Made by a program: the position numbers and the translations under genes
The notes under the pieces: model-generated
Database searches by the model: none
What the model saw: only the letters and a program-made list of their open reading frames with translations
What the model was told of the DNA's origin: nothing
NCBI RefSeq assembly: GCF_000315625.1
Contig: NW_005434642.1
Coordinates: forward strand, 345,131-409,130
DNA length: 64,000 nt
Direction: 5' to 3'
Source of the DNA: Guillardia theta CCMP2712
Lineage: Eukaryota > Protista > Cryptophyta
Shown here: piece by piece, positions 10,167-20,377 of the stretch
Position numbering within the stretch: position 1 is the stretch's first letter
Layout of the letters: every line of letters starts with the position of its first letter

Positions 10167-11185
10167 GAAGGAAAGATCGGATCATGGCCTCTGCTGAAGG
10201 CGTCAATGTTCAAGCATCATTTCGTTGTCATGGTGCATCAGTAGGCTCAGTGCAGAGACGCTGATGAAATATTGCCAAGCTCGATCATAGTTGACTGGAT
10301 TCACTGAAACTGTCCTGCTGAGTGAGTCGGGGGCCGGCAGTGGTGTCATGAATCAGTTCAGACCTGCCAGGTATCATGACTCTGATCAGTTGGGCCTGGC
10401 TCTGGCATGGCGGGGCGGCGGCCTTGCCATGCTGCTGCTCAACGTTGGCAGTAGATGGACTCAGAGCCGCGCTCGGCAGGACTGCCGCACTGAATGCCGT
10501 TGGGACGGAGAGTCGGTCACGGCTGGGTCGCCGGCTGTGCGGCAGCCTCAACCGTCGGCCCGGCGGTAACTTCAGTTTTGTTGCTGTCTTTCCAGTAACT
10601 TATTTATTGAACTTCGGAAGTCTTGGAATGGAGTGCTTGGAATGAGTCTCTGCAAACTCCGAGTCTATTTCTGATTCAGAAGCACCTATGCGGGTTCTGC
10701 CGCGGTCGCACGTACTCGCGGCACTGGCCCATGAGTTGGTACGACACACGGTCAGCTTAACTTTGAGTAAAGTAGTCAGCCGGTCCCGGCTGCCGCCGGC
10801 CTGGGCGCCTCACCGTCACTGCACCCGACCGTCCGTACGGTGACTGACTCGCCGGGAACTCCGGAACCGGGCGTCACTAGCGGCCTCCGCCTGAGTCCGC
10901 CTCACTGCCAGGCTGCAGTGCGGCTGAAGTTTCATCCGATGAAACGGAAATGTAACGGCACCCTCTAAATGTGGCGGTCGGGCGAAGCCTTATGTCGGGG
11001 CAGAAGGCCAGATGCGGGAGGCCTAGAGCCTCGCTGAGTGGCTCGGACGAGCCTCTCCCTTCTCCCCTCCTCCTGGGCTGCTACCTCCTCACCCGAGAAT
11101 GACGTGTCCCACCCATGGCAACAGCAAGTAGTGTCAGGCCTGACCGCGTCTGAGGGGTGTACAGCCAGGATTCGCAGCTGCAAGG

Positions 11186-14100
11186 ATGAACCCTACGGAG
11201 TTGCTCGGGTCCATGGCGCTCGTCCGTCCTGACCCATACGATGAAGCGACTGCATTGCGTTTTGGAGATTTTATATTGTTATCATGCAGCTTCATCGAGG
11301 ACAACGCTGGGTTCCTGTGCGAGCAAGGGTGCGTGCGAAAGCGCTGGGATACGCATCTAAAGCTTTCCTCTCGTGAGTTGGTGTTTGAAGTTTGCACCGC
11401 AAGGGAAGAACGGTTCTTGGTAGAGTGGGAATCCCTGAACAAGAACCGAGCACGAGTTGAGGACTTCTCAAGGTTAGAGCATGTCAAGATGCAGAATCAG
11501 ATGGAAAAGAAGGCCAACGACTCGCAAGCCGAGCACATGACAGGGAAGCCTGTGCATTACGGAGATGTGATACAGCTACGCCAGTTGAAGTCGCAAGCGT
11601 TTCTAGGAGTAGATATAAGTCAGGCCCCACGAGATGAGCCCACGGCTAAGAAGATTGTTCTCCATGACAGGCCAGGAAAGCCAGTAGGTTTCAAGATCCT
11701 ACCTCGTTTCAGATACCTGGTGGAGGGTCATACAGTATGCTATGGAGACCAAATCACTTTGGAAAGCATGTCCTTTCCCCGGGAGTTCCTGCATGCATCA
11801 AACAACTCGTGCTACCCGTCTGAAATCGGAATGATACACGAGGTGACCCTCAGTATACGCCAGGAGGCTGCATGGAAAGTAGAGCCATTCCTTTCCTTCT
11901 CGTTGCAGTCCAAGGCTTTGGTGAAAGTCGGAGATGTTGTTCGGCTGTATCATCCATTCCATCAAGCATACATCGCAGCAACGGGAATGGATAACACAGT
12001 CTACCTACAGTCAGGTCAAACCTCGCTCTCTTCAACTATGTGGGTTGTGGCAGACAAGAATCCCCTCATCGGAGGTCTAGTGAAGCTGCACCATAGCTAC
12101 AGTCTGATGCATCTCGTGACGAAACGTTATCTCTGCGTGACTGCTGAGAAGCTGCAACCAGCTCTGAGAATCAACACTGTCCACGAAAGCTATGACGATG
12201 GCCAGGAGGACAGCTCTCGAAGCCTGTTTTCTGCTGTGAAGTTGAGTGCCAATCACTCTCACGGTGTGTTCTTCAGCTTCGAGCCCTACGATGACGATCA
12301 CCAGAACTTGCATCTGCAGTGGTCAGGCAGGATCAGGCTGATGCACACAAACACAAGAGACTATCTTCACTGTATGAACTCACATCAACTGAGCGACCCG
12401 TTGCGTCCGTTAGAAGATGCAGATTCTTCGCAGATCGCTAGACTGAATGTGATAGAGGAGGATCATCAGATCTCTTACGAGGAGAGATTAGCGGAAGACT
12501 TGTCCAAGTTGCCCGAACGAGTGGTTGTCTCGTCTCCCGCCTTGTTCCGAGAGGACAGCTTCGATGTGGAGCAGGTCCCTGAAGAGCAGATAAGGTCTGT
12601 CGATGTGGTTCTTGGTATCCTGCCAACCCTGGAGAGCTACTTGATGCAGATGAACAAATTCGAGAGCATCGAGTTCTCTGAAGATGTAGTGCTGGAGATT
12701 CTTGACCGGCTGTCGGATTTGAGGTTGTACATCTATGACATCCAAGTGAGGGACAGGACGAAGATAGCCGTGCTGAATGACAAAGAGTTGCTGCAGATGA
12801 ACCCGCTGGAGTATTGTCAAAACTTCATGCATGACCTGGGAGTTCCCCAGCTGCTCTTTGCGATCATACGGCAGACTTGCAAGATTTGGTTGAAGCAGGT
12901 ACCGACGACTGCTGAGCCCGCAAACAACCTGAAGAGTGACAAGACACAAAAGAAAGTCAATCAAACGAAGAGTTCTGGGCTGTACAAACTGATCAGCCCC
13001 ACAAACTTGTTGAACCTACCAAGGAACAGAAGCGCCAAATTGGTTCTTCAAATGTGCTACTCAGTCCTCTGGCACATTGTGCACAAACACAAGAAGAACT
13101 CTATAGAGGTCGCGAGCTTTTTGAATGAGATGCAGGACCACCTCATCCTGGACATCGGAGCTGAACGAGTTCTGCTGGAGGTGCTCGAAGGCAACGAGAA
13201 GCTCCTTCTGTCCTTGGCTGGCGACGCTACCCGGGATGATCACATCCGATTTCACCTCCGGGCCCTGGCGACTGAGGGAAAGGATCCGATGCACGTGCGA
13301 TTTCTGTCTGCCTTCACCGCTGTAGCAGACAGAGGCATCTCCCGCCACCAAGACATCGTCCTGGAGAGCATCCTTGACGAAGTCGATGACATCCTCCTCC
13401 GGGTGCGGGTGGAGTGCCAGGCCGTGCAGCTCTTCGATGCTCGACACGCGATCTCTGAGAACCCTTCGACATGGAGGGACCTCGGGGATCTCGTGGCCGA
13501 CATGTCACGTGCGGGGAAGCGAGGTCATCAGAGTCGAAGGATGCTGGAGTACTGGATTGAAACCTTCGCGCTGCTAGCCAACCTTTGCAAGCCCGACTCC
13601 CTGGGAAGGAGGCAGTTCATCATCGGGAGGGTGAAGAAGTTTGTGCCTTTGGAGGTCTGCATATCCTGTCTGCAGGACGACAGGCTGTCTGAACACCTTC
13701 GGAGGCACGTGTGCGAGTTCATCAGGTTCTGTTACGTGGAGGGCGATGAGTTCAACAGCATCACCAGGCTAACCGGAATCTCAATCTGGAAGGATCTTGA
13801 CTCATACCAAAACTTTCACTTCTTGAACAGAGTCACTGAGGAGAAGCAGGCAGGCAGTCAACAGCCAGACTCTGCAAGGAATCCCGACCCTCCCAAGGAC
13901 CTGTATGACCTGAGAACCATCGTCAGGGAGTACTTTGCTCAGTCATCTTGCCAGATGTACCCGGGGGAGCGGCCGTTCGCCAACGAGCTGAAGCTCTCGA
14001 TGCTGAAGCTCTGCAAGCAGTTGCTGGTATTTGGGTTTGTGTGCGAGGAAGACCTCAAGTCAGTGATCAAGGAGACCATGGACCTGCTGGACTTTTCTTC

Positions 14101-17100
14101 TCTTCGCTTCAATCGGACTGAGAACAACTTTCACTTCGACAAGGACCGTGCAAGGAGCTCGTCGCTGACCAAGTCCGACAAGAAGGTGGAGGCGGACAAG
14201 AATGCGCTGCTGCTGTCTGATCAAACCATTTCGGCCGCACTCAAGCACCTCCGCCCCATCTGCAAGTTCGTCACTCCCCTCGAGATCCCCCGCATCTGTT
14301 CCGCCTTCCAAGTGCGCGTGTTCGAACCAGGGACCACGTTGGTGGAAGTGAATGACGCGGCAGGAGCCATGTACGTCATCCAGACAGGTTCAGTGTTCGT
14401 GATCGAGACCCGAGAGGGAGTGGAGATTGTCGTGGAGACTCTGTTGCCTGGCCAGCAGTTTGGCAGAGAGTCTCTCATAGGAGAGATCAAGACTTGGCCC
14501 TGGAAGGTCCGCTGCTCTCAGAGGGTGATCGCTCTGATCCTGACTGCCAACGACTTCACGGAGTTCGTCGAGTACTGTGATAAGTCCGGCAGACTGCAGC
14601 TCACCGACGAGCTTCAGATCATCCTGGAGACGAAGAGGGAGGCTTGCTCGCTGCTAGACGCGATCTACGACCTCAGCCTGTCGGTTCGAACCACCAAGAT
14701 GCTGCAGGAATATCGGTTTGACTTGAACGTGTCAAAGAAAGAGTACGTGCTGGGTATGCTGGCAGACAACTCGGGGCAACTGCTGCACAGGTTCCCATCC
14801 AAGGTCCTAGCTAACCAGAAGACGGTGCCTGACGTGATCAGCATCTCCTTCCCTTACCTCCCTCAGCTTTCTGTGCGCCTGAAGCCGCTGTTCAGAATCT
14901 ACAGCGATGCGCTGCGAATTGACAGGATAGTCGTCCTTTCATCGTTCGTGCAGTATGTTCTGGCCACCGTTGTGATCATCTTGCTCTCTGTTCGGATCCA
15001 GGAAGTCAGAGCTGCAGGCTGGGCACTGGGAAGCTCTGCTCGTTACTCCAGTCACCCAGGGCTGTCTAACGGGTATGCCGCGCTTGTCGTCAACCTGATC
15101 CTTACCGTCATTTGGGCTCTCTCCCTCATAGTGAATTGCTTTGCAGTCTACACCTTCCACAGGGTGGCGATCTTGAACTCGCCGTCTGAAAGGCATCTCA
15201 ACCTCTTGAAGGCGGGACTTGTCGTTCAGTGCTGCTACTTGGTCTATTTCTTTCTCAACACCCTTGTTTGCTTCTCGTTTGCGCTTGCCGACAGCAATGC
15301 AAATGACAGCGTTTACGGCATCTGGACCCAGCTGCTGTGGTGTTGCCTTCTCACCCCCCTCCTGTGCTTGAACCTCTACTTCCTCAGCTCCTTGCGGTCA
15401 TTCATGGAGTTTCCCAGTCTGTTCAGCGAGCAGGGGTCGTCGGAGGAGACGAGCCTGCGCAAGAAACCAGGAGCTCCAAGGAGGGAGTTCATCAAGATCA
15501 TAGAGTTCATGAACCTCGACGAGGACGGGTGGCTGTCGAGTTGCCTTGCTGACCTCATCATCTTCCCCTATGAGCCCCTGGTGGTCGACGCCTTCAGCCT
15601 GCTCGTTAGGACCCACCAAAACCAGTTCTTCCTCCACAAGTCCCTGTCCAACACTCTGATCCTTATTGAGGACGACAGCGACGTGCTGAATCGCTTCGCC
15701 GATCGGCTCACCCTGAACTTCCTGCGGGTGGCTAACGACATTCAGTCCTTCACTGTGGAGCGCATGCACTACATCTCGAGTAAGGCGAGCAAGGACAACG
15801 ACCTGCGCATCAGGGCCATCTCGTCTGTCGAGCCGAAGCTGAACAAGCTGCTTGAGATGATCGGCGATGACAAGCCGGTGGTCCAGAGGAGGCTGTTCCA
15901 AAGGAAGAGCGTCCACAAAGTTCTGCTGAGGCTCCTCCGATGTCTCCCAGCTGACTTCCAGGAGACCACGGGCCCTCTCTGCTTCCAGTGCCTGGCGGCC
16001 CTCTGCAATGACAGCCTCCCGATCCAGCACGAGCTCAGTCAGCACCTGAGCATCTTCAGGACGTTCCAGGACTCCATCCCGCGAAGTGTCGTCATGCTGC
16101 TCTCCGCCATCTACTCCGACAACGTGGACCTGTGCTACAACGTAGAAGAGAGCCTGATCTCGCACGTGACCGACTTGATGCAGGATGAGGTGGACGTCTG
16201 CTACCTCAACTTCCTGCAGGTGCTCATCCACCCCAAGCAGCAGATCCTGCGGAGGAATCAGAACCTCGTGACCAAGTACCTCGAGCTGAACAGCATCCAG
16301 CTCCCTCTCTTCCAGGGAGCCGCGGGCAGGAGCACAAGAGCTACGATGCTGGATGATCCCAACACCTCCCAGGGAGTCCTGCGCTGCTACCTCGCGTCCA
16401 TCCGCCTCCTTACTATGTGCATGAAGGAGTCCAACTTCGAGAACAAGGCCCGGTTCCGGCGGGCCGGCAGCCCCCTGGCCATGTCACTGGACGACATCGT
16501 GGAGGATCTGAGGGATGAGAAGCTGCCGGCCAAGATCAAGGAAGCTCTCCTCGCCTTCCTCACAGAGGCCTACGTCAGGGTCGACATGGTCAATGCCCAC
16601 CTGCGCCTCCAGCTGGAGCTGTGCGACATCTTCGAGCACTTTGCGCGCTCTATCGAGCTCTTGCCCTGCAGCCCGCAAGGGCACAAGACCCAGCTCCTGT
16701 CCAGCAGCGAGAGGTCCCTCCTCATCGTCGGGTACCTGGACTCGGCCCAGGCTCTCTTCAGCTCTCTCCCACCTGCCGACCTGATGCAGAGAGACAACAT
16801 CCGGGTGAAGGTCGGTGGGCACCTGCTGGAGGTTCTGCTGGACTTGCTGGACAGTGACAGGAGGGTACTGCAAGCACACGAGGAGCTGAGAATCCTTGAC
16901 CTGGTCTCGTTGCTGACCTCCAACCTGCGCTCCTCCTTTTCTCGCTTCAAGTTCCTCCACCCCAAGTTCCAAGACGTGTTTGGCTTCTCTTCGTTGAAGA
17001 TCAGCCTGAAGGACTCCAGCAGCTCGCACGCCGCTGGTTCGGCCTCGGAGCAGGAGGAGGACAAGCTGTTCGAGGAGAGCTGTGTGGCTGAGAGGAGAAA

Positions 17101-20100
17101 GGAGATCGAGAGGAGCCTTGAGGAGCAAGAGGAGAGGCGGCAGGGTCAGAAGCTGGACATTCCCAGCGGCGTCGTCGTGTTTGCCAACGAGTTCTTGAGA
17201 TCGATGGAGTCGTGCGAGCATGATGAGGGGCAGCGGCTGAAGAATGCGTTCCTGGAGGGCAGCGCGAGAGGAGACGGGGGGGAGGGTAGCATCAGCTTCC
17301 AGCACATGCAGAGCTTGATCAGCATGCTGTCAAACTCGTCGAAGCTCTCCCACCAGCTGACGGAGAGGGCTCTCAAGATCGTCAAGGACCTTGTTATGAT
17401 CCAGCAGAAGCAGAGCAGGGCTAACTGCACGGCGGAGGGGGAGGAGAAGAGGAGGTGGCTGAAGCACGGGATCGCGAAGATGGTGATTGAGATCATGTCG
17501 ACGTCGCACAAGCAGGACAAGGTCGTGCTCGAGTGCCTCAACATCTCAAACTTCATGCTCGACAACGGGAAGGCGCCTTGCCAGGGGGCCTTCATGGAGC
17601 TGCTCAGGAGGGACGAGAAGAACTCGCTCTTTCAGAACCTGCGCGACCGCCTGGTGCGGGCTGAGAGGTCCCTCCCGATGCTCCAGAGCTCGTTCAACAA
17701 GTACTGCTCCGAGCTCTCGGCGCAGAGCAGCAACAAGGGGTTCGATTTGACGCTGGGAGGGATAGAAGAGATCATGAAGGAGGACAGGGCGAACGACGTC
17801 TTCTACGGCAGCCAGGTCCTCCTCATCCTCCGCTTCCTGCAGCTCCTGTGCGAGGGGCACAACAAGGACATGCAGGAGTACGTCCGGTTCCAGGGCAAGA
17901 AGTCGATCGATCTCGTCTCCTCCTGCGCTGAGTTCCTTGCCGCCTGCTCAAGGCACATGCACCCCTGCTCCATCGCCTTCGCCCTCCAGGGCGTTGACAC
18001 GCTCATCGAGTTCGTCCAGAACCCTTGCTACAAGAACCAGCGGGCGCTGGTGGACACTCAGCTCCCGCACGTCCTCAACCAGTTCCTCCAGCTTATTCCC
18101 ACCTGCAGCGTCCAGCTGGTGGACATCAGCAGGTACGAGGCGGACGTGGACGCGCTGAAGAACAAGTCGGTGACTCTCCTCCTCTCCCTCCTCGAGCGCG
18201 TCGACGACCCCTTCATCCCCGCCAGGATCCTCAAGGCCCTGGAGATCGACAAGCTCATCATGCAGATGAACTCGCTGCAGGAGCAGTACCTTGCGGGGGA
18301 CAACGCCAAGTTCCGCCACTACGAGGAGGGGAAGGTGGCTGTGGAGGAGATCAGTCAGCACGGGGCCTTCCAGGTCGCCTGCTCGCTGTTCATGCTGGTG
18401 GTGATGCTGCAGTACTTTGACAAGGAGGACGAGCACGACCTGGCCTCGAAGCTCAATGAGGAAGTCATCCAAGACTTCGTCCGCCTGCAGGCCAACTGCG
18501 GCTTCATCGAGATCTCCCGCGACGGGAAGCTGGAGAGGGTCTTCTTCCAGATCCCCGCCATCTGCCGTCACCTCAGCAGGGAAGCGAAGAACGACGTCCT
18601 GCGGGACCTGAACAGAGGCAACCACCAGGACCGCATGCTCGGGCTGGTGGAGAGCTCCCTCCTCCGGTACGACGAGATGGTGTACATGTACGAGCTGCAC
18701 AAATCTGTCGTCTACGAGGCCTTCCACCGAGTCAGCAAGCACCTCGACGTCTCGTTCTTCCTCAACGCTCTCCTCCTCAACTTCCTCATCCTCTTCGGAT
18801 TCAGGTACAAGGACACCCAGTACGTCACCCTTGAGAACATGAGCAACATCGTCCTGCCCGCCTCCTTCGTCAGCCCGATCCTGACCTTCGCTGCCTTTCA
18901 GTTGGTCCTGTGCCTGCTCAGGCTGAGCAGGTACATGATCGAATCAGGTTTCTTCCGAGTCAAAAAGATCTTCCTCTCTCGCCCGGACTACTACCAAGTC
19001 TACACGGAGCTCTACGGTGGCCCGAAGTACTTCTATCTCTTCGGCACAATCCTCCTCACCGACAAGTTCCTCCTCCTCCTCCTCTTCTACTTGGTCATGA
19101 ACCTGTTGGCCCTCTACCTCGGTTCCCAGGACCCCCGCTTTCTCTTCTTTCTCATCTCCCACCTTATCGACATGTTCCACCTCAGCCGCGCCCTTGGCAA
19201 CGTCGTCAGGGCAGTGTCTAGCAGGGCCAACACCCTCCTGCAGACCGCGGCCCTCGCCTTTGTCATGATGTTCATCTACAGCGCCATCGGCTTCGTCCTC
19301 TTCCCAGAGTACTTCGCGTTCGAGGCGGCGGAGGTGCGCAACGGAGACGAGATGAGCTACAACGTCAACTCGGCTCGCTGCGACTCAGTGTGGAAGTGCT
19401 TCCTGGTCGTGGTTGACATGGGGCTGCGCAAGGGAGACGTCGGAGGAGCGCTGGAGGACATCCAGTGGCGGAGCGTGATGCCGGGGACCACTGTGGAGCC
19501 CTGCTCCTCCCCTCCTGGTCTAGAGTACATGGGATGCCTCGGGATAGGTGGGATCGACGTGGGCCCGTACATCATCCTCCGCATCGCGTACACGACGACG
19601 TTCTTCATCTTGGTCAACACCATCCTCCTCAACATCATCTTCGGCATCATCATCGATACGTTCGGGGAGCTGCGCAAGCAGAACCAGGACATGGAGGAGG
19701 ACCTGAACCTCCGCTGCTTTATCTGCGGGCTGGAGAGGTACAGGTTCGAGATCAACTCGAGGGACGGGCTGGGGTTCGAGCAGCACGTGAAGAAGGACCA
19801 CAACATCTGGGACTTCCTCTACTTCATCGTCTACCTCTCGCAGAAGAGCATCGACGAGCACACAGGCTTCGAGTCCTATGTCTTCAAGAAGCTCAACGAC
19901 TTGGACGAGGCAGGAGGAGTGGTCAGGAAGCACATCCCCGACGTCTCCTGGATCCCTTGCAAGGAGGCCATGGTGCTCAAGGGCCGAGGGGGGGAGGAGG
20001 ACGAGCAGTCGCTCGCTGCCAGGCTGGTGAAGCTGGGAAAGGAGATCAAAAGTCTTGCAAGCAGCACGCAGGCACACCTGCAGGCGCTGCTGTTCACGGC

Positions 20101-20377
20101 CGAGAGCGGTGCTCAGTTTGAGGAGGAGGAGGAGGAGGAGGAGGAGGAGGATTATGATGAGGATGATGATCATGGTGGATATGATGATGAGTATGGAGAA
20201 GGGAAGGAGGAGGAGGAGGAGGAGGAGGAGGAGGAGGAGGAGAGTGAGAGGCGGGACCTTCATGACAGCAGGGCGTCTTCTCCGCTATCGGACATCGTCA
20301 GGGAGGATGGAGAACAAGACAGCGAAGAAGGTGCGAGAAGAGACAGTGGGGATTTTCTCATTCCCGGGGTATTCTAG
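11186..20377 (+). CDS. ITPR: IP3-receptor/ryanodine-receptor superfamily Ca2+-release channel (IP3R-like), 3063 aa, intronless
   Basis: N-terminal beta-trefoil motifs (GKPVHYGDVIQLRQLKS, FKILPRFRY..EG..VCYGDQITL); MIR (VGDVVRLYH, YSLMHLVTKRYL); RIH-associated (LRFLQLLCEGHN, TLIEFVQNPC..NQ); IEI.RDGKLERVFFQIP; C-terminal TM region with CDSVWKCF..GLR, LLNIIFGIIIDTFGELR, CFICGLER..HVKKDHNIWDFLYF. Confidence 0.95.
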   Translation: MNPTELLGSMALVRPDPYDEATALRFGDFILLSCSFIEDNAGFLCEQGCVRKRWDTHLKLSSRELVFEVCTAREERFLVEWESLNKNRARVEDFSRLEHVKMQNQMEKKANDSQAEHMTGKPVHYGDVIQLRQLKSQAFLGVDISQAPRDEPTAKKIVLHDRPGKPVGFKILPRFRYLVEGHTVCYGDQITLESMSFPREFLHASNNSCYPSEIGMIHEVTLSIRQEAAWKVEPFLSFSLQSKALVKVGDVVRLYHPFHQAYIAATGMDNTVYLQSGQTSLSSTMWVVADKNPLIGGLVKLHHSYSLMHLVTKRYLCVTAEKLQPALRINTVHESYDDGQEDSSRSLFSAVKLSANHSHGVFFSFEPYDDDHQNLHLQWSGRIRLMHTNTRDYLHCMNSHQLSDPLRPLEDADSSQIARLNVIEEDHQISYEERLAEDLSKLPERVVVSSPALFREDSFDVEQVPEEQIRSVDVVLGILPTLESYLMQMNKFESIEFSEDVVLEILDRLSDLRLYIYDIQVRDRTKIAVLNDKELLQMNPLEYCQNFMHDLGVPQLLFAIIRQTCKIWLKQVPTTAEPANNLKSDKTQKKVNQTKSSGLYKLISPTNLLNLPRNRSAKLVLQMCYSVLWHIVHKHKKNSIEVASFLNEMQDHLILDIGAERVLLEVLEGNEKLLLSLAGDATRDDHIRFHLRALATEGKDPMHVRFLSAFTAVADRGISRHQDIVLESILDEVDDILLRVRVECQAVQLFDARHAISENPSTWRDLGDLVADMSRAGKRGHQSRRMLEYWIETFALLANLCKPDSLGRRQFIIGRVKKFVPLEVCISCLQDDRLSEHLRRHVCEFIRFCYVEGDEFNSITRLTGISIWKDLDSYQNFHFLNRVTEEKQAGSQQPDSARNPDPPKDLYDLRTIVREYFAQSSCQMYPGERPFANELKLSMLKLCKQLLVFGFVCEEDLKSVIKETMDLLDFSSLRFNRTENNFHFDKDRARSSSLTKSDKKVEADKNALLLSDQTISAALKHLRPICKFVTPLEIPRICSAFQVRVFEPGTTLVEVNDAAGAMYVIQTGSVFVIETREGVEIVVETLLPGQQFGRESLIGEIKTWPWKVRCSQRVIALILTANDFTEFVEYCDKSGRLQLTDELQIILETKREACSLLDAIYDLSLSVRTTKMLQEYRFDLNVSKKEYVLGMLADNSGQLLHRFPSKVLANQKTVPDVISISFPYLPQLSVRLKPLFRIYSDALRIDRIVVLSSFVQYVLATVVIILLSVRIQEVRAAGWALGSSARYSSHPGLSNGYAALVVNLILTVIWALSLIVNCFAVYTFHRVAILNSPSERHLNLLKAGLVVQCCYLVYFFLNTLVCFSFALADSNANDSVYGIWTQLLWCCLLTPLLCLNLYFLSSLRSFMEFPSLFSEQGSSEETSLRKKPGAPRREFIKIIEFMNLDEDGWLSSCLADLIIFPYEPLVVDAFSLLVRTHQNQFFLHKSLSNTLILIEDDSDVLNRFADRLTLNFLRVANDIQSFTVERMHYISSKASKDNDLRIRAISSVEPKLNKLLEMIGDDKPVVQRRLFQRKSVHKVLLRLLRCLPADFQETTGPLCFQCLAALCNDSLPIQHELSQHLSIFRTFQDSIPRSVVMLLSAIYSDNVDLCYNVEESLISHVTDLMQDEVDVCYLNFLQVLIHPKQQILRRNQNLVTKYLELNSIQLPLFQGAAGRSTRATMLDDPNTSQGVLRCYLASIRLLTMCMKESNFENKARFRRAGSPLAMSLDDIVEDLRDEKLPAKIKEALLAFLTEAYVRVDMVNAHLRLQLELCDIFEHFARSIELLPCSPQGHKTQLLSSSERSLLIVGYLDSAQALFSSLPPADLMQRDNIRVKVGGHLLEVLLDLLDSDRRVLQAHEELRILDLVSLLTSNLRSSFSRFKFLHPKFQDVFGFSSLKISLKDSSSSHAAGSASEQEEDKLFEESCVAERRKEIERSLEEQEERRQGQKLDIPSGVVVFANEFLRSMESCEHDEGQRLKNAFLEGSARGDGGEGSISFQHMQSLISMLSNSSKLSHQLTERALKIVKDLVMIQQKQSRANCTAEGEEKRRWLKHGIAKMVIEIMSTSHKQDKVVLECLNISNFMLDNGKAPCQGAFMELLRRDEKNSLFQNLRDRLVRAERSLPMLQSSFNKYCSELSAQSSNKGFDLTLGGIEEIMKEDRANDVFYGSQVLLILRFLQLLCEGHNKDMQEYVRFQGKKSIDLVSSCAEFLAACSRHMHPCSIAFALQGVDTLIEFVQNPCYKNQRALVDTQLPHVLNQFLQLIPTCSVQLVDISRYEADVDALKNKSVTLLLSLLERVDDPFIPARILKALEIDKLIMQMNSLQEQYLAGDNAKFRHYEEGKVAVEEISQHGAFQVACSLFMLVVMLQYFDKEDEHDLASKLNEEVIQDFVRLQANCGFIEISRDGKLERVFFQIPAICRHLSREAKNDVLRDLNRGNHQDRMLGLVESSLLRYDEMVYMYELHKSVVYEAFHRVSKHLDVSFFLNALLLNFLILFGFRYKDTQYVTLENMSNIVLPASFVSPILTFAAFQLVLCLLRLSRYMIESGFFRVKKIFLSRPDYYQVYTELYGGPKYFYLFGTILLTDKFLLLLLFYLVMNLLALYLGSQDPRFLFFLISHLIDMFHLSRALGNVVRAVSSRANTLLQTAALAFVMMFIYSAIGFVLFPEYFAFEAAEVRNGDEMSYNVNSARCDSVWKCFLVVVDMGLRKGDVGGALEDIQWRSVMPGTTVEPCSSPPGLEYMGCLGIGGIDVGPYIILRIAYTTTFFILVNTILLNIIFGIIIDTFGELRKQNQDMEEDLNLRCFICGLERYRFEINSRDGLGFEQHVKKDHNIWDFLYFIVYLSQKSIDEHTGFESYVFKKLNDLDEAGGVVRKHIPDVSWIPCKEAMVLKGRGGEEDEQSLAARLVKLGKEIKSLASSTQAHLQALLFTAESGAQFEEEEEEEEEEDYDEDDDHGGYDDEYGEGKEEEEEEEEEEEESERRDLHDSRASSPLSDIVREDGEQDSEEGARRDSGDFLIPGVF

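What the first reader, a model, noticed from the sequence alone, without database searches (positions are those of the whole stretch)
14240..15410. IP3R-like channel with an inserted cyclic-nucleotide-binding-like domain and an extra four-helix membrane bundle in the cytosolic solenoid
Seen: within the 3063-aa ORF, ~14240-14575 reads LEIPRICSAFQVRVFEPGTTLVEVNDAAGAMYVIQTGSVFV...TLLPGQQFGRESL...VRCSQRVIALILTANDF, a cNMP-binding-fold pattern. About 14925-15405 then encodes four hydrophobic stretches (VVLSSFVQYVLATVVIILLSV; YAALVVNLILTVIWALSLIVNCFAVYTF; AGLVVQCCYLVYFFLNTLVCFSFAL; GIWTQLLWCCLLTPLLCLNLYFL), far upstream of the true pore. Established: animal IP3R/RyR have neither feature in the ARM solenoid. 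The phosphate-binding cassette looks degenerate (FGRES instead of FGE; W where the conserved Arg is expected), like a CNBH domain. Inference: a new channel subclass with an alternative ligand or regulatory module and a second membrane anchor. An even helix count keeps both flanks cytosolic and could tether the channel to a second membrane or sense the lumen.
Basis: partly seen in the sequence, partly recalled or inferred. Interest (0 to 1): 0.85.

Follow-up and report, generated by a model that had tools for sequence, protein, structure and literature searches.

The report
IP3R-like channel with CNB-like and 4-TM insert
A cryptophyte calcium-release channel of the IP3-receptor/ryanodine-receptor family carries, in the middle of its cytosolic scaffold, a conserved module made of a cyclic-nucleotide-binding-like domain and four extra membrane-spanning helices, which I could not find described in any IP3R/RyR paper I searched and which suggests a new way of regulating or anchoring such channels.

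Summary
One uninterrupted 3063-aa ORF (window 11186-20377, +) encodes a complete IP3R/RyR-superfamily channel.

**The insert.** It replaces about 150 residues of the helical/central linker domain (IP3R1 900-1050) and adds about 310 residues net. It contains:
- a Pfam-significant, well-folded cNMP-binding-fold domain (aa 1012-1134);
- a very conserved 44-residue helix;
- a variable, roughly 55-residue linker;
- four helices as hydrophobic as the pore helices (aa 1245-1408), with invariant polar residues on one face of each.

**Conservation.** The whole module is colinear in a Hanusia phi transcript (76% identity) and in marine metagenome proteins (35-40% identity). It is single-copy in this genome, and absent from the 7-10 other RIH_assoc (IP3R/RyR-like) loci. 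Only about a dozen of 1.84 billion cluster representatives carry it.

**Binding pocket.** The phosphate-binding cassette lacks both canonical cNMP contacts: the Glu is V/L/R, and the Arg aligns with Trp. Yet it is among the most conserved stretches of the module, so it is a CNB-homology domain under selection, not a decaying one.

**Best reading.** This is a lineage-specific (probably cryptist) channel subclass. The module is a regulatory sensor plus a membrane anchor in the same ER membrane as the pore. A tether to a second membrane is unlikely. Ligand and mechanism are untested.

The scan had not noted this feature before on other DNA.

The parts
11186..20377 (+). Single-exon ORF of 3063 aa: an IP3R/RyR-superfamily channel.
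   Evidence: A 9055-nt contig of run X1 covers the stretch that was laid (window 12800-17000) without a gap or joint. Extrapolating from its length, it would span window 11092-20146.
11246..12202 (+). N-terminal Ins145_P3_rec and MIR (beta-trefoil) region, aa 21-339. It lacks the basic R-T-T-G-R IP3-contact cluster.
   Evidence: Pfam. Alignments to IP3R3 and IP3R1.
14219..14587 (+). CNB-homology domain, aa 1012-1134: N-terminal helices, beta-roll and B-helix.
   Evidence: Pfam PF00027 at 41.2/46.1 bits. pLDDT about 90. Foldseek to PKG, PKA and MloK1 CNBs.
14459..14527 (+). Cassette-equivalent motif, aa 1092-1114: F-G-x-[DE]-[ST]-L ... K-T-W-P-W-x-V-R-C-S-Q. It lacks the canonical Glu and Arg.
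   Evidence: 50% of its columns are invariant.
14603..14734 (+). Long conserved helix after the CNB domain, aa 1140-1183. This is the most conserved element of the module.
   Evidence: Helix 141-183 in the model. 67% of columns are invariant among six sequences.
14747..14911 (+). Variable, low-confidence linker, aa 1188-1242.
   Evidence: pLDDT below 50. 9% of columns are invariant.
14918..15013 (+). Extra TM helix 1, aa 1245-1276, with hydrophobic core 1247-1268.
   Evidence: Q1256 is nearly invariant.
15014..15073 (+). Loop between TM1 and TM2, predicted luminal, variable in length, ending in the invariant H-P-G (aa 1290-1292).
15074..15169 (+). Extra TM helix 2, aa 1297-1328. N1303 and W1310 are invariant and T1307 is nearly invariant; all three lie on one face.
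   Evidence: Helical resultant 0.91.
15188..15289 (+). Extra TM helix 3, aa 1335-1368, with invariant Q1348, Y1351, N1358 and T1359.
15299..15409 (+). Extra TM helix 4, aa 1372-1408, with invariant Q1382 and W1385.
15410..15529 (+). Short return linker of conserved length, followed by the invariant P-R-R-E-F...L-D-E-x-G motif where homology to IP3R1 residue 1050 resumes.
18743..19801 (+). Six-TM pore domain with conserved S6, a family-specific pore loop, and the C2H2 zinc finger.

Best explanation
The gene encodes a lineage-specific (probably cryptist) subclass of IP3R/RyR-superfamily intracellular Ca2+-release channel.

**Architecture.** Its helical/central linker domain, between ARM1 and ARM2, carries a conserved module of about 430 residues. 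In order, the module has:
- a CNB-homology domain whose pocket has lost the canonical cNMP contacts but is itself strongly conserved;
- a rigid, nearly invariant 44-residue helix;
- a flexible linker of about 55 residues;
- a four-helix TM bundle with a polar core;
- a short return linker of about 30 residues.

**Proposed working (inferred).** The four helices insert at the ER translocon into the same membrane as the pore. That gives 10 TM helices per subunit and pins the peripheral solenoid to the bilayer. The CNB-homology domain and its long C-helix act as a switch. It is driven either by a non-cNMP small ligand or by an intramolecular contact, as in KCNH and CNNM CNB-homology domains. The switch changes the geometry between the anchored bundle and the HD/ARM2 hinge and so biases gating.

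**Core gating (inferred from alignment).** The core machinery looks retained, so Ca2+ is probably still the co-agonist. The two Ca2+-sensor Glu, S6 and the zinc finger are all present. The basic IP3-contact cluster of beta-trefoil 2 is absent, so IP3 may not be the ligand.

The confidence figure is for the whole statement: about 0.9 for the architecture, about 0.35-0.4 for the mechanism.
For: **The architecture is real**
- Pfam; AF2 model and Foldseek.
- Hydropathy and insertion energies equal to the pore helices.
- The language-model atlas and VIA-align both list small 4-TM membrane proteins near the top: DUF4728 and TMEM217-like clusters, MS4A/FcepsilonRI-beta, tetraspanins, sarcospan and synaptophysin.

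**Position of the insertion**
- Flank profiles map query aa about 808-980 to IP3R1 747-899, and about 1442-1513 to IP3R1 1050-1123.
- This lies inside ARM1-HD, defined as residues 638-1102 in IP3R2 numbering (PMC13503717).

**Conserved as one unit**
- Hanusia phi transcript, 76% identity, with the same Pfam set.
- Four metagenomic clusters at 35-40% identity.
- The invariant polar residues lie on one face of each TM helix.

**Rare and specific**
- Single copy in the 87-Mb genome.
- Apart from this gene, the genome has 7 to 10 other RIH_assoc matches, some of which may be exons of one gene. None gave a match to the module.
- Only about 12 of 1.84e9 cluster representatives extend beyond the CNB part.

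**Probably in the mRNA**
- The sister-species protein comes from a source that I take to be a transcriptome set.
- No gap or joint across window 12800-17000 in a 9055-nt contig. Extrapolated from its length, the contig would start 94 nt upstream of the ATG and end in the poly-Glu codons.

**Pocket non-canonical but constrained:**

**Channel core intact:**
Against: - No experimental or dedicated topology prediction was available.
- The relative placement of the CNB domain and the bundle is uncertain (pTM 0.44).
- The test of the bundle docking on the pore domain gave no answer.
- Whether a 30-residue return linker can span from the linker domain to the membrane was judged from memory of IP3R structures, not computed.
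- No ligand was tested.
- An acidic residue one position after the canonical Glu is invariant. A shifted but functional ribose contact, and hence cNMP binding, is therefore not excluded.
Confidence: 0.5

Rival explanations
1. It is a genuine cAMP- or cGMP-gated Ca2+-release channel. The CNB domain binds a cyclic nucleotide in a slightly shifted pocket and transmits this through its C-helix, as the C-linker/CNBD does in HCN and CNG channels.
For: The Pfam score is above the gathering cut-off. The beta-roll is well folded. F-G and an invariant acidic residue are retained in the cassette, one position later than usual. The pocket is under strong constraint.
Against: The canonical Glu position is V/L/R in the family. 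The Arg position aligns with an invariant Trp-Pro-Trp. From my own knowledge, loss of these two contacts marks non-binding CNB-homology domains (KCNH, CNNM) and the nucleoside-binding trypanosome PKA regulatory subunits. Entries 6h4g and 6hyi of that last group appear among the fold matches.
Confidence: 0.15
2. The four helices span a second membrane (plasma membrane, periplastid or vesicle membrane), making the channel a built-in membrane-contact tether.
For: An even helix count returns the chain to the cytosol. The insertion point is at the periphery of the cytosolic assembly. A flexible linker of about 55 residues precedes TM1.
Against: By inference from established biogenesis, multi-pass segments of one chain are integrated at the same ER translocon. 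The return linker is only about 30 residues long and conserved in length. No data point to a second membrane.
Confidence: 0.07
3. The hydrophobic helices are not membrane-spanning. They form a buried hydrophobic core or a lipid-binding helical bundle within the solenoid.
For: The modelled helices are 32-37 residues long, longer than a minimal TM span. Structure searches also hit soluble four-helix bundles, with Z values below the level that is specific for helical bundles.
Against: There are four consecutive stretches of 22-28 residues without a single charged residue. Their insertion energies equal those of the pore helices, and nothing comparable occurs elsewhere in about 2400 residues of solenoid. 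Low hydrophobic moments and polar invariants on one face are typical of TM bundles.
Confidence: 0.07
4. It is an artefact: a retained intron, an assembly chimera or a gene fusion that does not exist in the mature protein.
For: The true RNA-seq run gave only 3 reads over the stretch, so direct RNA support in this species is thin. I recall genes of this genome as usually having introns, which was not checked here.
Against: The reading frame stays open for 9.2 kb. The module is colinear and conserved at the protein level in a sister-species transcript and in independent metagenome contigs. No joints were seen.
Confidence: 0.02

Closest known systems
Animal inositol 1,4,5-trisphosphate receptors (ITPR1-3)
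   Same: The overall order is the same: beta-trefoils/MIR, RIH solenoid, RIH_assoc, six-TM pore, C2H2 zinc finger. It is the best PDB match at E 6e-88. The two Ca2+-sensor Glu motifs are conserved.
   Different: About 310 extra residues (CNB-homology domain plus 4 TM helices) replace IP3R1 900-1050. The basic R-T-T-G-R IP3-contact cluster is absent. The filter reads G-D-V-G-G-A-L-E-D instead of G-G-V-G-D and is followed by a conserved Cys-containing loop of about 35 residues.
Ryanodine receptors, and the protist Ca2+-release channels of Paramecium (PMC3213138 is listed but was not read)
   Same: Same superfamily. S6 and the C-terminal region are as similar to RyR as to IP3R (E about 1e-30). 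Both are examples of lineage-specific domain insertions in the solenoid; the SPRY, RY and EF-hand insertions of RyR are from my own knowledge.
   Different: No SPRY or RY repeats are present. To my knowledge, none of these channels has a CNB fold or mid-protein TM helices, and no paper found here describes such a case.
CNB-homology domains of KCNH (EAG/hERG) channels and CNNM transporters, and the nucleoside-binding PKA regulatory subunits of trypanosomatids
   Same: They share a CNB fold with the canonical phosphate and ribose contacts replaced, used as a regulatory module of a membrane protein (fold matches; cassette analysis).
   Different: Here the domain is inserted inside a solenoid, upstream of its TM helices. 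Its own cassette motif (K-T-W-P-W...R-C-S-Q) resembles none of them. No intrinsic-ligand strand was identified.
HCN/CNG/MloK1 cyclic-nucleotide-regulated tetrameric cation channels
   Same: Both are tetrameric cation channels with one CNB-fold domain per subunit, whose C-helix is the likely output element (fold matches).
   Different: In HCN and CNG channels the domain follows S6 through a C-linker and binds cNMP with canonical Glu and Arg. Here it sits 1400 residues upstream of the pore and lacks both contacts.
Small four-TM proteins (MS4A/CD20/FcepsilonRI-beta, tetraspanins, sarcospan, MARVEL)
   Same: They share the up-down four-helix TM bundle shape. The best VIA-align Z is 12.1, and these families are among the top rows.
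   Different: Z is below the level that is specific for helical bundles, Foldseek E is above 0.29, and there is no sequence or Pfam match. No membership is claimed.

Membership tests
IP3R/RyR superfamily of Ca2+-release channels | N-terminal Ins145_P3_rec/MIR beta-trefoils, RIH and RIH_assoc solenoid domains | tested here: met
   All score above the Pfam cut-offs. Colinear alignment to IP3R3 (6dqj) in four blocks.
IP3R/RyR superfamily of Ca2+-release channels | C-terminal six-TM pore with conserved S6 and a C2H2 zinc finger | tested here: met
   Ion_trans hit. S6 and the C-F-I-C-G...H-x4-H motif align to IP3R2 and RyR1 at E about 1e-30.
IP3R/RyR superfamily of Ca2+-release channels | Two Glu of the cytosolic Ca2+ activation site (RyR1 E3893 and E3967; residue identities recalled from the literature) | tested here: met
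   The L-L-C-E-G-H-N and L-I-E-F-V-Q-N-P-C motifs align to the corresponding IP3R1 motifs.
IP3-gated receptor in the strict sense | Basic IP3-coordinating residues of beta-trefoil 2 (IP3R1 R265 and R269) and of ARM1 (R504, K508, R511, Y567-K569) | tested here: not met
   The R-T-T-G-R cluster is deleted or replaced by Q-S-G-Q in the whole family. The ARM1 cluster could not be aligned reliably, so that part is inconclusive.
IP3-gated receptor / RyR | Selectivity filter G-G-[VI]-G-D | tested here: not met
   It reads G-D-V-G-G-A-L-E-D, invariant in P0001 and P0002.
cNMP_binding domain (PF00027) | Profile score above the gathering threshold, and the beta-roll fold | tested here: met
   41.2 and 46.1 bits against 27.5. 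Target TM-score 0.72-0.80 to PKG, PKA and MloK1 CNB domains.
Functional cyclic-nucleotide-binding domain | Cassette Glu (ribose 2'-OH contact) and Arg (phosphate contact) | tested here: not met
   The Glu position (86% Glu in 279 other CNB domains) is V/L/R. The Arg position aligns to an invariant Trp, within about one residue.
Functional cyclic-nucleotide-binding domain | Measured binding of cAMP or cGMP | not testable with these tools
   This needs ITC or a fluorescence assay on the purified domain.
Integral membrane four-helix bundle | Four uncharged hydrophobic spans of at least 20 residues, with insertion energy like known TM helices and a loop charge pattern consistent with N-in/C-in topology | tested here: met
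   Helices have pLDDT 80-92.
Integral membrane four-helix bundle | Experimental membrane integration or a dedicated topology predictor | not testable with these tools
   No DeepTMHMM or TOPCONS was available, and there are no biochemical data.
Voltage-sensor domain (considered and rejected) | Regularly spaced Arg/Lys in the fourth helix | tested here: not met
   TM4 (aa 1378-1400) has no basic residue.

The most novel reading that the evidence does not exclude
In this lineage the CNB-homology plus four-TM module has taken over from the lost IP3 site as the primary sensor.

The conserved Trp-rich pocket would bind a messenger other than cAMP, cGMP or IP3. Alternatively, the bundle with its invariant polar core and the luminal H-P-G loop would report the state of the ER lumen or bilayer. 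In cryptophytes the ER lumen also encloses the plastid complex. The near-invariant long helix would transmit the signal to the HD/ARM2 hinge.

That would be a new gating principle for the IP3R/RyR superfamily: a ligand or luminal sensor that is itself membrane-embedded, giving 40 TM helices per tetramer.
Probability: 0.2. Interest if true: 0.85.

Novelty: new variant of a known kind. Interest (0 to 1): 0.62.

Why it matters
IP3R and RyR channels are the central Ca2+-release machines of eukaryotes. All well-studied members keep their roughly 2000-residue regulatory solenoid entirely cytosolic, and none that I know senses ligands through a CNB fold.

A conserved natural variant that pins the solenoid to the membrane with four extra helices and adds a CNB-type switch would do three things:
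- It would show that this scaffold tolerates large insertions at the HD/ARM2 hinge, and can perhaps be regulated through it. A recent IP3R2 structure paper treats ARM2 motion as a determinant of ligand sensitivity (PMC13503717).
- It would offer a testable link between cyclic-nucleotide-type sensing and store Ca2+ release in algae.
- It would provide a new four-TM fold with a polar core whose function is open.

It also bears on how protists that lack the canonical IP3 contacts gate these channels.

Tried and rejected
- **Fragment search.** A word-based search with the 425-aa module alone found nothing at E <= 1e-10. Candidates were probably swamped by ordinary CNB proteins, so this is uninformative.
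- **Pfam on the TM part alone.** No family was found.
- **Fold searches on the bundle.** Foldseek against the PDB gave best E 0.29. The ESM-atlas shape search gave only unnamed clusters and unrelated families. VIA-align wide gave best Z 12.1, below the level that is specific for helical bundles. No fold family was assigned.
- **Complex prediction.** Docking the bundle against the channel's own six-TM pore domain gave 'no answer' with score 0.00. This is evidence neither for nor against.
- **Taxon of the metagenomic relatives.** Cluster look-ups gave no organism names. The one exception is a single 333-aa fragment filed under an archaeal MAG, which is almost certainly a binning contaminant. A flanking carboxypeptidase gene on the 23-kb Tara contig has Guillardia theta as its best named match, at 65% against about 57% for animals and Palpitomonas. 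That is only a hint that the relatives are cryptists.
- **Direct RNA support.** The true RNA-seq run gave only 3 reads. Support for transcription rests on a contig of a run whose RNA nature is a guess, and on the sister-species transcript.
- **Literature.** Four searches and three papers read in part found no description of this architecture. A fifth search failed on term syntax. The library is incomplete, so absence is not proven.
- **Voltage-sensor reading of the bundle.** Rejected, because TM4 has no basic residues.
- **CNNM- or Popeye-type origin.** Rejected on domain order and the lack of any profile match.
Full report
**1. What is in the sequence**

Window 11186-20377 (+) is one open frame of 3063 codons. 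Pfam finds the full set of IP3R/RyR-superfamily domains in the usual order: Ins145_P3_rec 21-238, MIR 246-339, RIH 537-740, RIH_assoc 2213-2300 and Ion_trans 2630-2833. One extra hit, cNMP_binding, lies at aa 1044-1129. It scores 41.2 bits against a cut-off of 27.5, and 46.1 bits when the segment is scanned alone.

A Kyte-Doolittle scan shows four strong hydrophobic peaks between aa 1247 and 1401. The only other peaks are the six of the C-terminal pore and one weaker one. An insertion-energy scan (scale values recalled from Hessa 2005) gives -1.75 to +0.96 kcal/mol for the four segments, against -2.29 to +2.56 for the pore helices. Only 2.8% of all 19-mers fall below 4 kcal/mol.

**2. Fold**

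An AlphaFold2 model of aa 1001-1425, built on a 16-row family alignment, has these parts:
- a CNB domain at pLDDT of about 90;
- a 43-residue helix (model 141-183);
- a disordered stretch (model 188-242);
- four helices of 32-37 residues at pLDDT 80-92.

Foldseek places the first part among PKG, PKA, MloK1, HCN and CAP CNB domains, with target TM-score 0.72-0.80 and rmsd about 3 A for single-domain entries.

The bundle modelled alone (pLDDT 73.9, pTM 0.63) has no specific structural relative. Foldseek E is at best 0.29. The atlas shape search gives nothing named. VIA-align's best Z is 12.1, below the level that is specific for helical bundles, though many top rows are four-TM membrane proteins such as MS4A, tetraspanins, sarcospan and synaptophysin. 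A language-model search likewise returns small multi-pass membrane protein clusters. That is weak evidence.

**3. Where the module sits**

Family profiles of the flanks were searched against the PDB. Query aa about 808-980 map to IP3R1 747-899. Query aa about 1442-1513 map to IP3R1 1050-1123, and about 1535-1655 map to 1166-1289 (consistent).

So about 460 residues stand where IP3R1 has about 150. Using the boundaries in PMC13503717 (ARM1-HD 638-1102, ARM2 1103-1582 in IP3R2 numbering), this is inside the helical/central linker domain just before ARM2. That paper describes ARM2 as a mobile hinge that tunes ligand sensitivity.

**4. Conservation and distribution**

A region-restricted search returns five full-length or near full-length relatives with the same Pfam set including PF00027. 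They are Hanusia phi (EukProt, 76% identity) and four metagenomic clusters (35-40% identity).

The module aligns colinearly in all of them. The fraction of invariant columns in the six-sequence alignment differs sharply between parts:

| Part | Invariant columns |
|---|---|
| Long helix | 67% |
| Cassette-equivalent stretch | 50% |
| Rest of the CNB domain | 13-38% |
| Linker | 9% |
| TM helices | 9-19% |

In the TM helices the conserved positions are polar. H-P-G before TM2, N1303 and W1310 in TM2, Q1348, Y1351, N1358 and T1359 in TM3, and Q1382 and W1385 in TM4 are invariant across ten sequences. T1307 (TM2) and Q1256 (TM1) are nearly invariant. These residues cluster on one helical face of each helix (resultants 0.75-0.98), as expected for a packed bundle with a polar core.

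A profile search of 1.84 billion cluster representatives finds 1278 CNB-type hits. Only about a dozen of them extend into the helix or TM part, and all are fragments of this same family.

In the window's own 87-Mb genome the module is single-copy. RIH_assoc gives 11 matches there, the first 8 of them with E of 5e-10 or better. One is this gene, which leaves 7 to 10 others, some of which may be exons of one gene. None of the others matched the module.

The metagenomic relatives carry no taxon names. A neighbouring carboxypeptidase gene on a 23-kb Tara Oceans contig has Guillardia theta as its best named match, at 65% against about 57% for the rest. This hints that the family is confined to cryptists. 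The window itself is most likely Guillardia theta.

**5. Is it in the mRNA?**

I take the Hanusia phi sequence to come from a transcriptome, judging by its EukProt-style name, and it contains the module. A 9055-nt contig of run X1 covers window 12800-17000 without gap, joint or mismatch. By arithmetic it spans window 11092-20146, from 94 nt upstream of the ATG to the poly-Glu codons. That looks like a transcript contig, but the run's RNA nature is only a guess. A true RNA-seq run gave just 3 reads, with no joints. Splicing-out of the segment is therefore very unlikely, though not formally excluded in this species.

**6. The binding pocket**

Residue-level alignments to PKA and to a Toxoplasma multi-CNB protein put the family's F-G-R opposite the canonical F-G-E. 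Against 279 other CNB domains, the Glu column (86% Glu) is V/L/R in the family. The next column is an invariant Asp/Glu. The column of the phosphate-binding Arg falls, within about one residue, on the invariant W of K-T-W-P-W.

Both hallmark contacts are thus missing, yet the stretch is highly constrained. From my own knowledge, the closest analogies are CNB-homology domains (KCNH, CNNM) and the nucleoside-binding PKA regulatory subunits of trypanosomatids, which appear among the fold matches. Canonical cNMP binding is unlikely but not excluded.

**7. The rest of the channel**

- S6 and the C2H2 zinc finger align to IP3R2 and RyR1 at E of about 1e-30.
- The two Glu-bearing motifs of the Ca2+ activation site are conserved (residue identities from memory).
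- The filter reads G-D-V-G-G-A-L-E-D instead of G-G-V-G-D. It is followed by a loop of about 35 residues with conserved Cys, and both features are invariant in P0001 and P0002.
- The basic R-T-T-G-R IP3-contact cluster of beta-trefoil 2 is deleted or replaced by Q-S-G-Q in the family.

The protein is therefore a member of the superfamily, but it should not be filed as an IP3-gated receptor.

**8. How it most likely works**

*Shown:* the architecture, its conservation, the non-canonical pocket and the TM-like character of the four helices.

*Inferred:*
- All TM segments of one chain are integrated at the ER translocon. The bundle therefore lies in the same membrane as the pore (10 TM helices per subunit), with N-in/C-in topology. 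Basic residues lie before TM1 and in the TM2-TM3 loop, and the TM3-TM4 loop is acidic.
- The linker of about 55 residues before TM1, and the return linker of about 30 residues with conserved length, allow the peripheral linker domain to be tied to the bilayer.
- The CNB-homology domain and its near-invariant C-helix form a switch that acts on the HD/ARM2 hinge against this fixed anchor.

A trans-membrane tether, canonical cNMP gating and a non-TM buried bundle are kept as rivals with low odds. A docking test of the bundle on the pore domain returned no answer.

**9. Novelty**

Four literature searches and partial reading of three papers found no description of an IP3R/RyR-type channel with a CNB fold or with mid-protein TM helices. 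These included a comparative-genomic survey of the ER Ca2+ system and a survey of algal Ca2+ channels. A fifth search failed on term syntax. The library is incomplete, and I expect the gene to be already in public databases as an unnamed model. I rate it a new variant of a known kind. It is well supported as an architecture and open as to ligand and mechanism.

Noticed in passing
window 19421-19564 (aa 2746-2793): The pore loop is rewritten. The filter reads G-D-V-G-G-A-L-E-D instead of G-G-V-G-D, and is followed by a luminal loop of about 35 residues with conserved Cys and a P-P-G-L-E-Y-M-G-C motif. This is invariant between the cryptophyte proteins and metagenomic P0002. Ion selectivity may differ from that of animal IP3R and RyR.
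   Followed up: partly
window 12002-12034 (aa 273-283): The basic R-T-T-G-R IP3-contact cluster of beta-trefoil 2 is absent (Q-S-G-Q or a 5-residue gap) in the whole family. The channel may not be gated by IP3.
   Followed up: partly
window 20114-20300 (aa 2977-3040): The C-terminal tail is extremely acidic, with two poly-Glu runs and D/Y/G-rich spacers. The transcript-like contig of run X1 breaks exactly there.
   Followed up: no
G000 contigs C81, C128, C5, C50, C7, C306, C187, C14 (loci L003-L009): Besides this gene, the genome holds 7 to 10 further RIH_assoc (IP3R/RyR-like) matches, several in long open frames of up to 2546 aa. This is a large, diversified family of release channels for a unicellular alga.
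   Followed up: partly
L010:4477-14371: On the Tara Oceans contig the relative P0005 stops at 13488, and a separate 277-aa Ion_trans ORF starts at 13538. The pore part is therefore separated by a short intron, a frameshift or an assembly error.
   Followed up: no
cluster of P0005: A 333-aa fragment of this eukaryotic channel is filed in NCBI under a 'Promethearchaeia archaeon' MAG. This is most likely a binning contaminant.
   Followed up: no
window 11186-20377: This is a 9.2-kb gene without any intron, in a genome whose genes I recall as usually intron-containing. The ORF is continuous and no joints were seen.
   Followed up: partly
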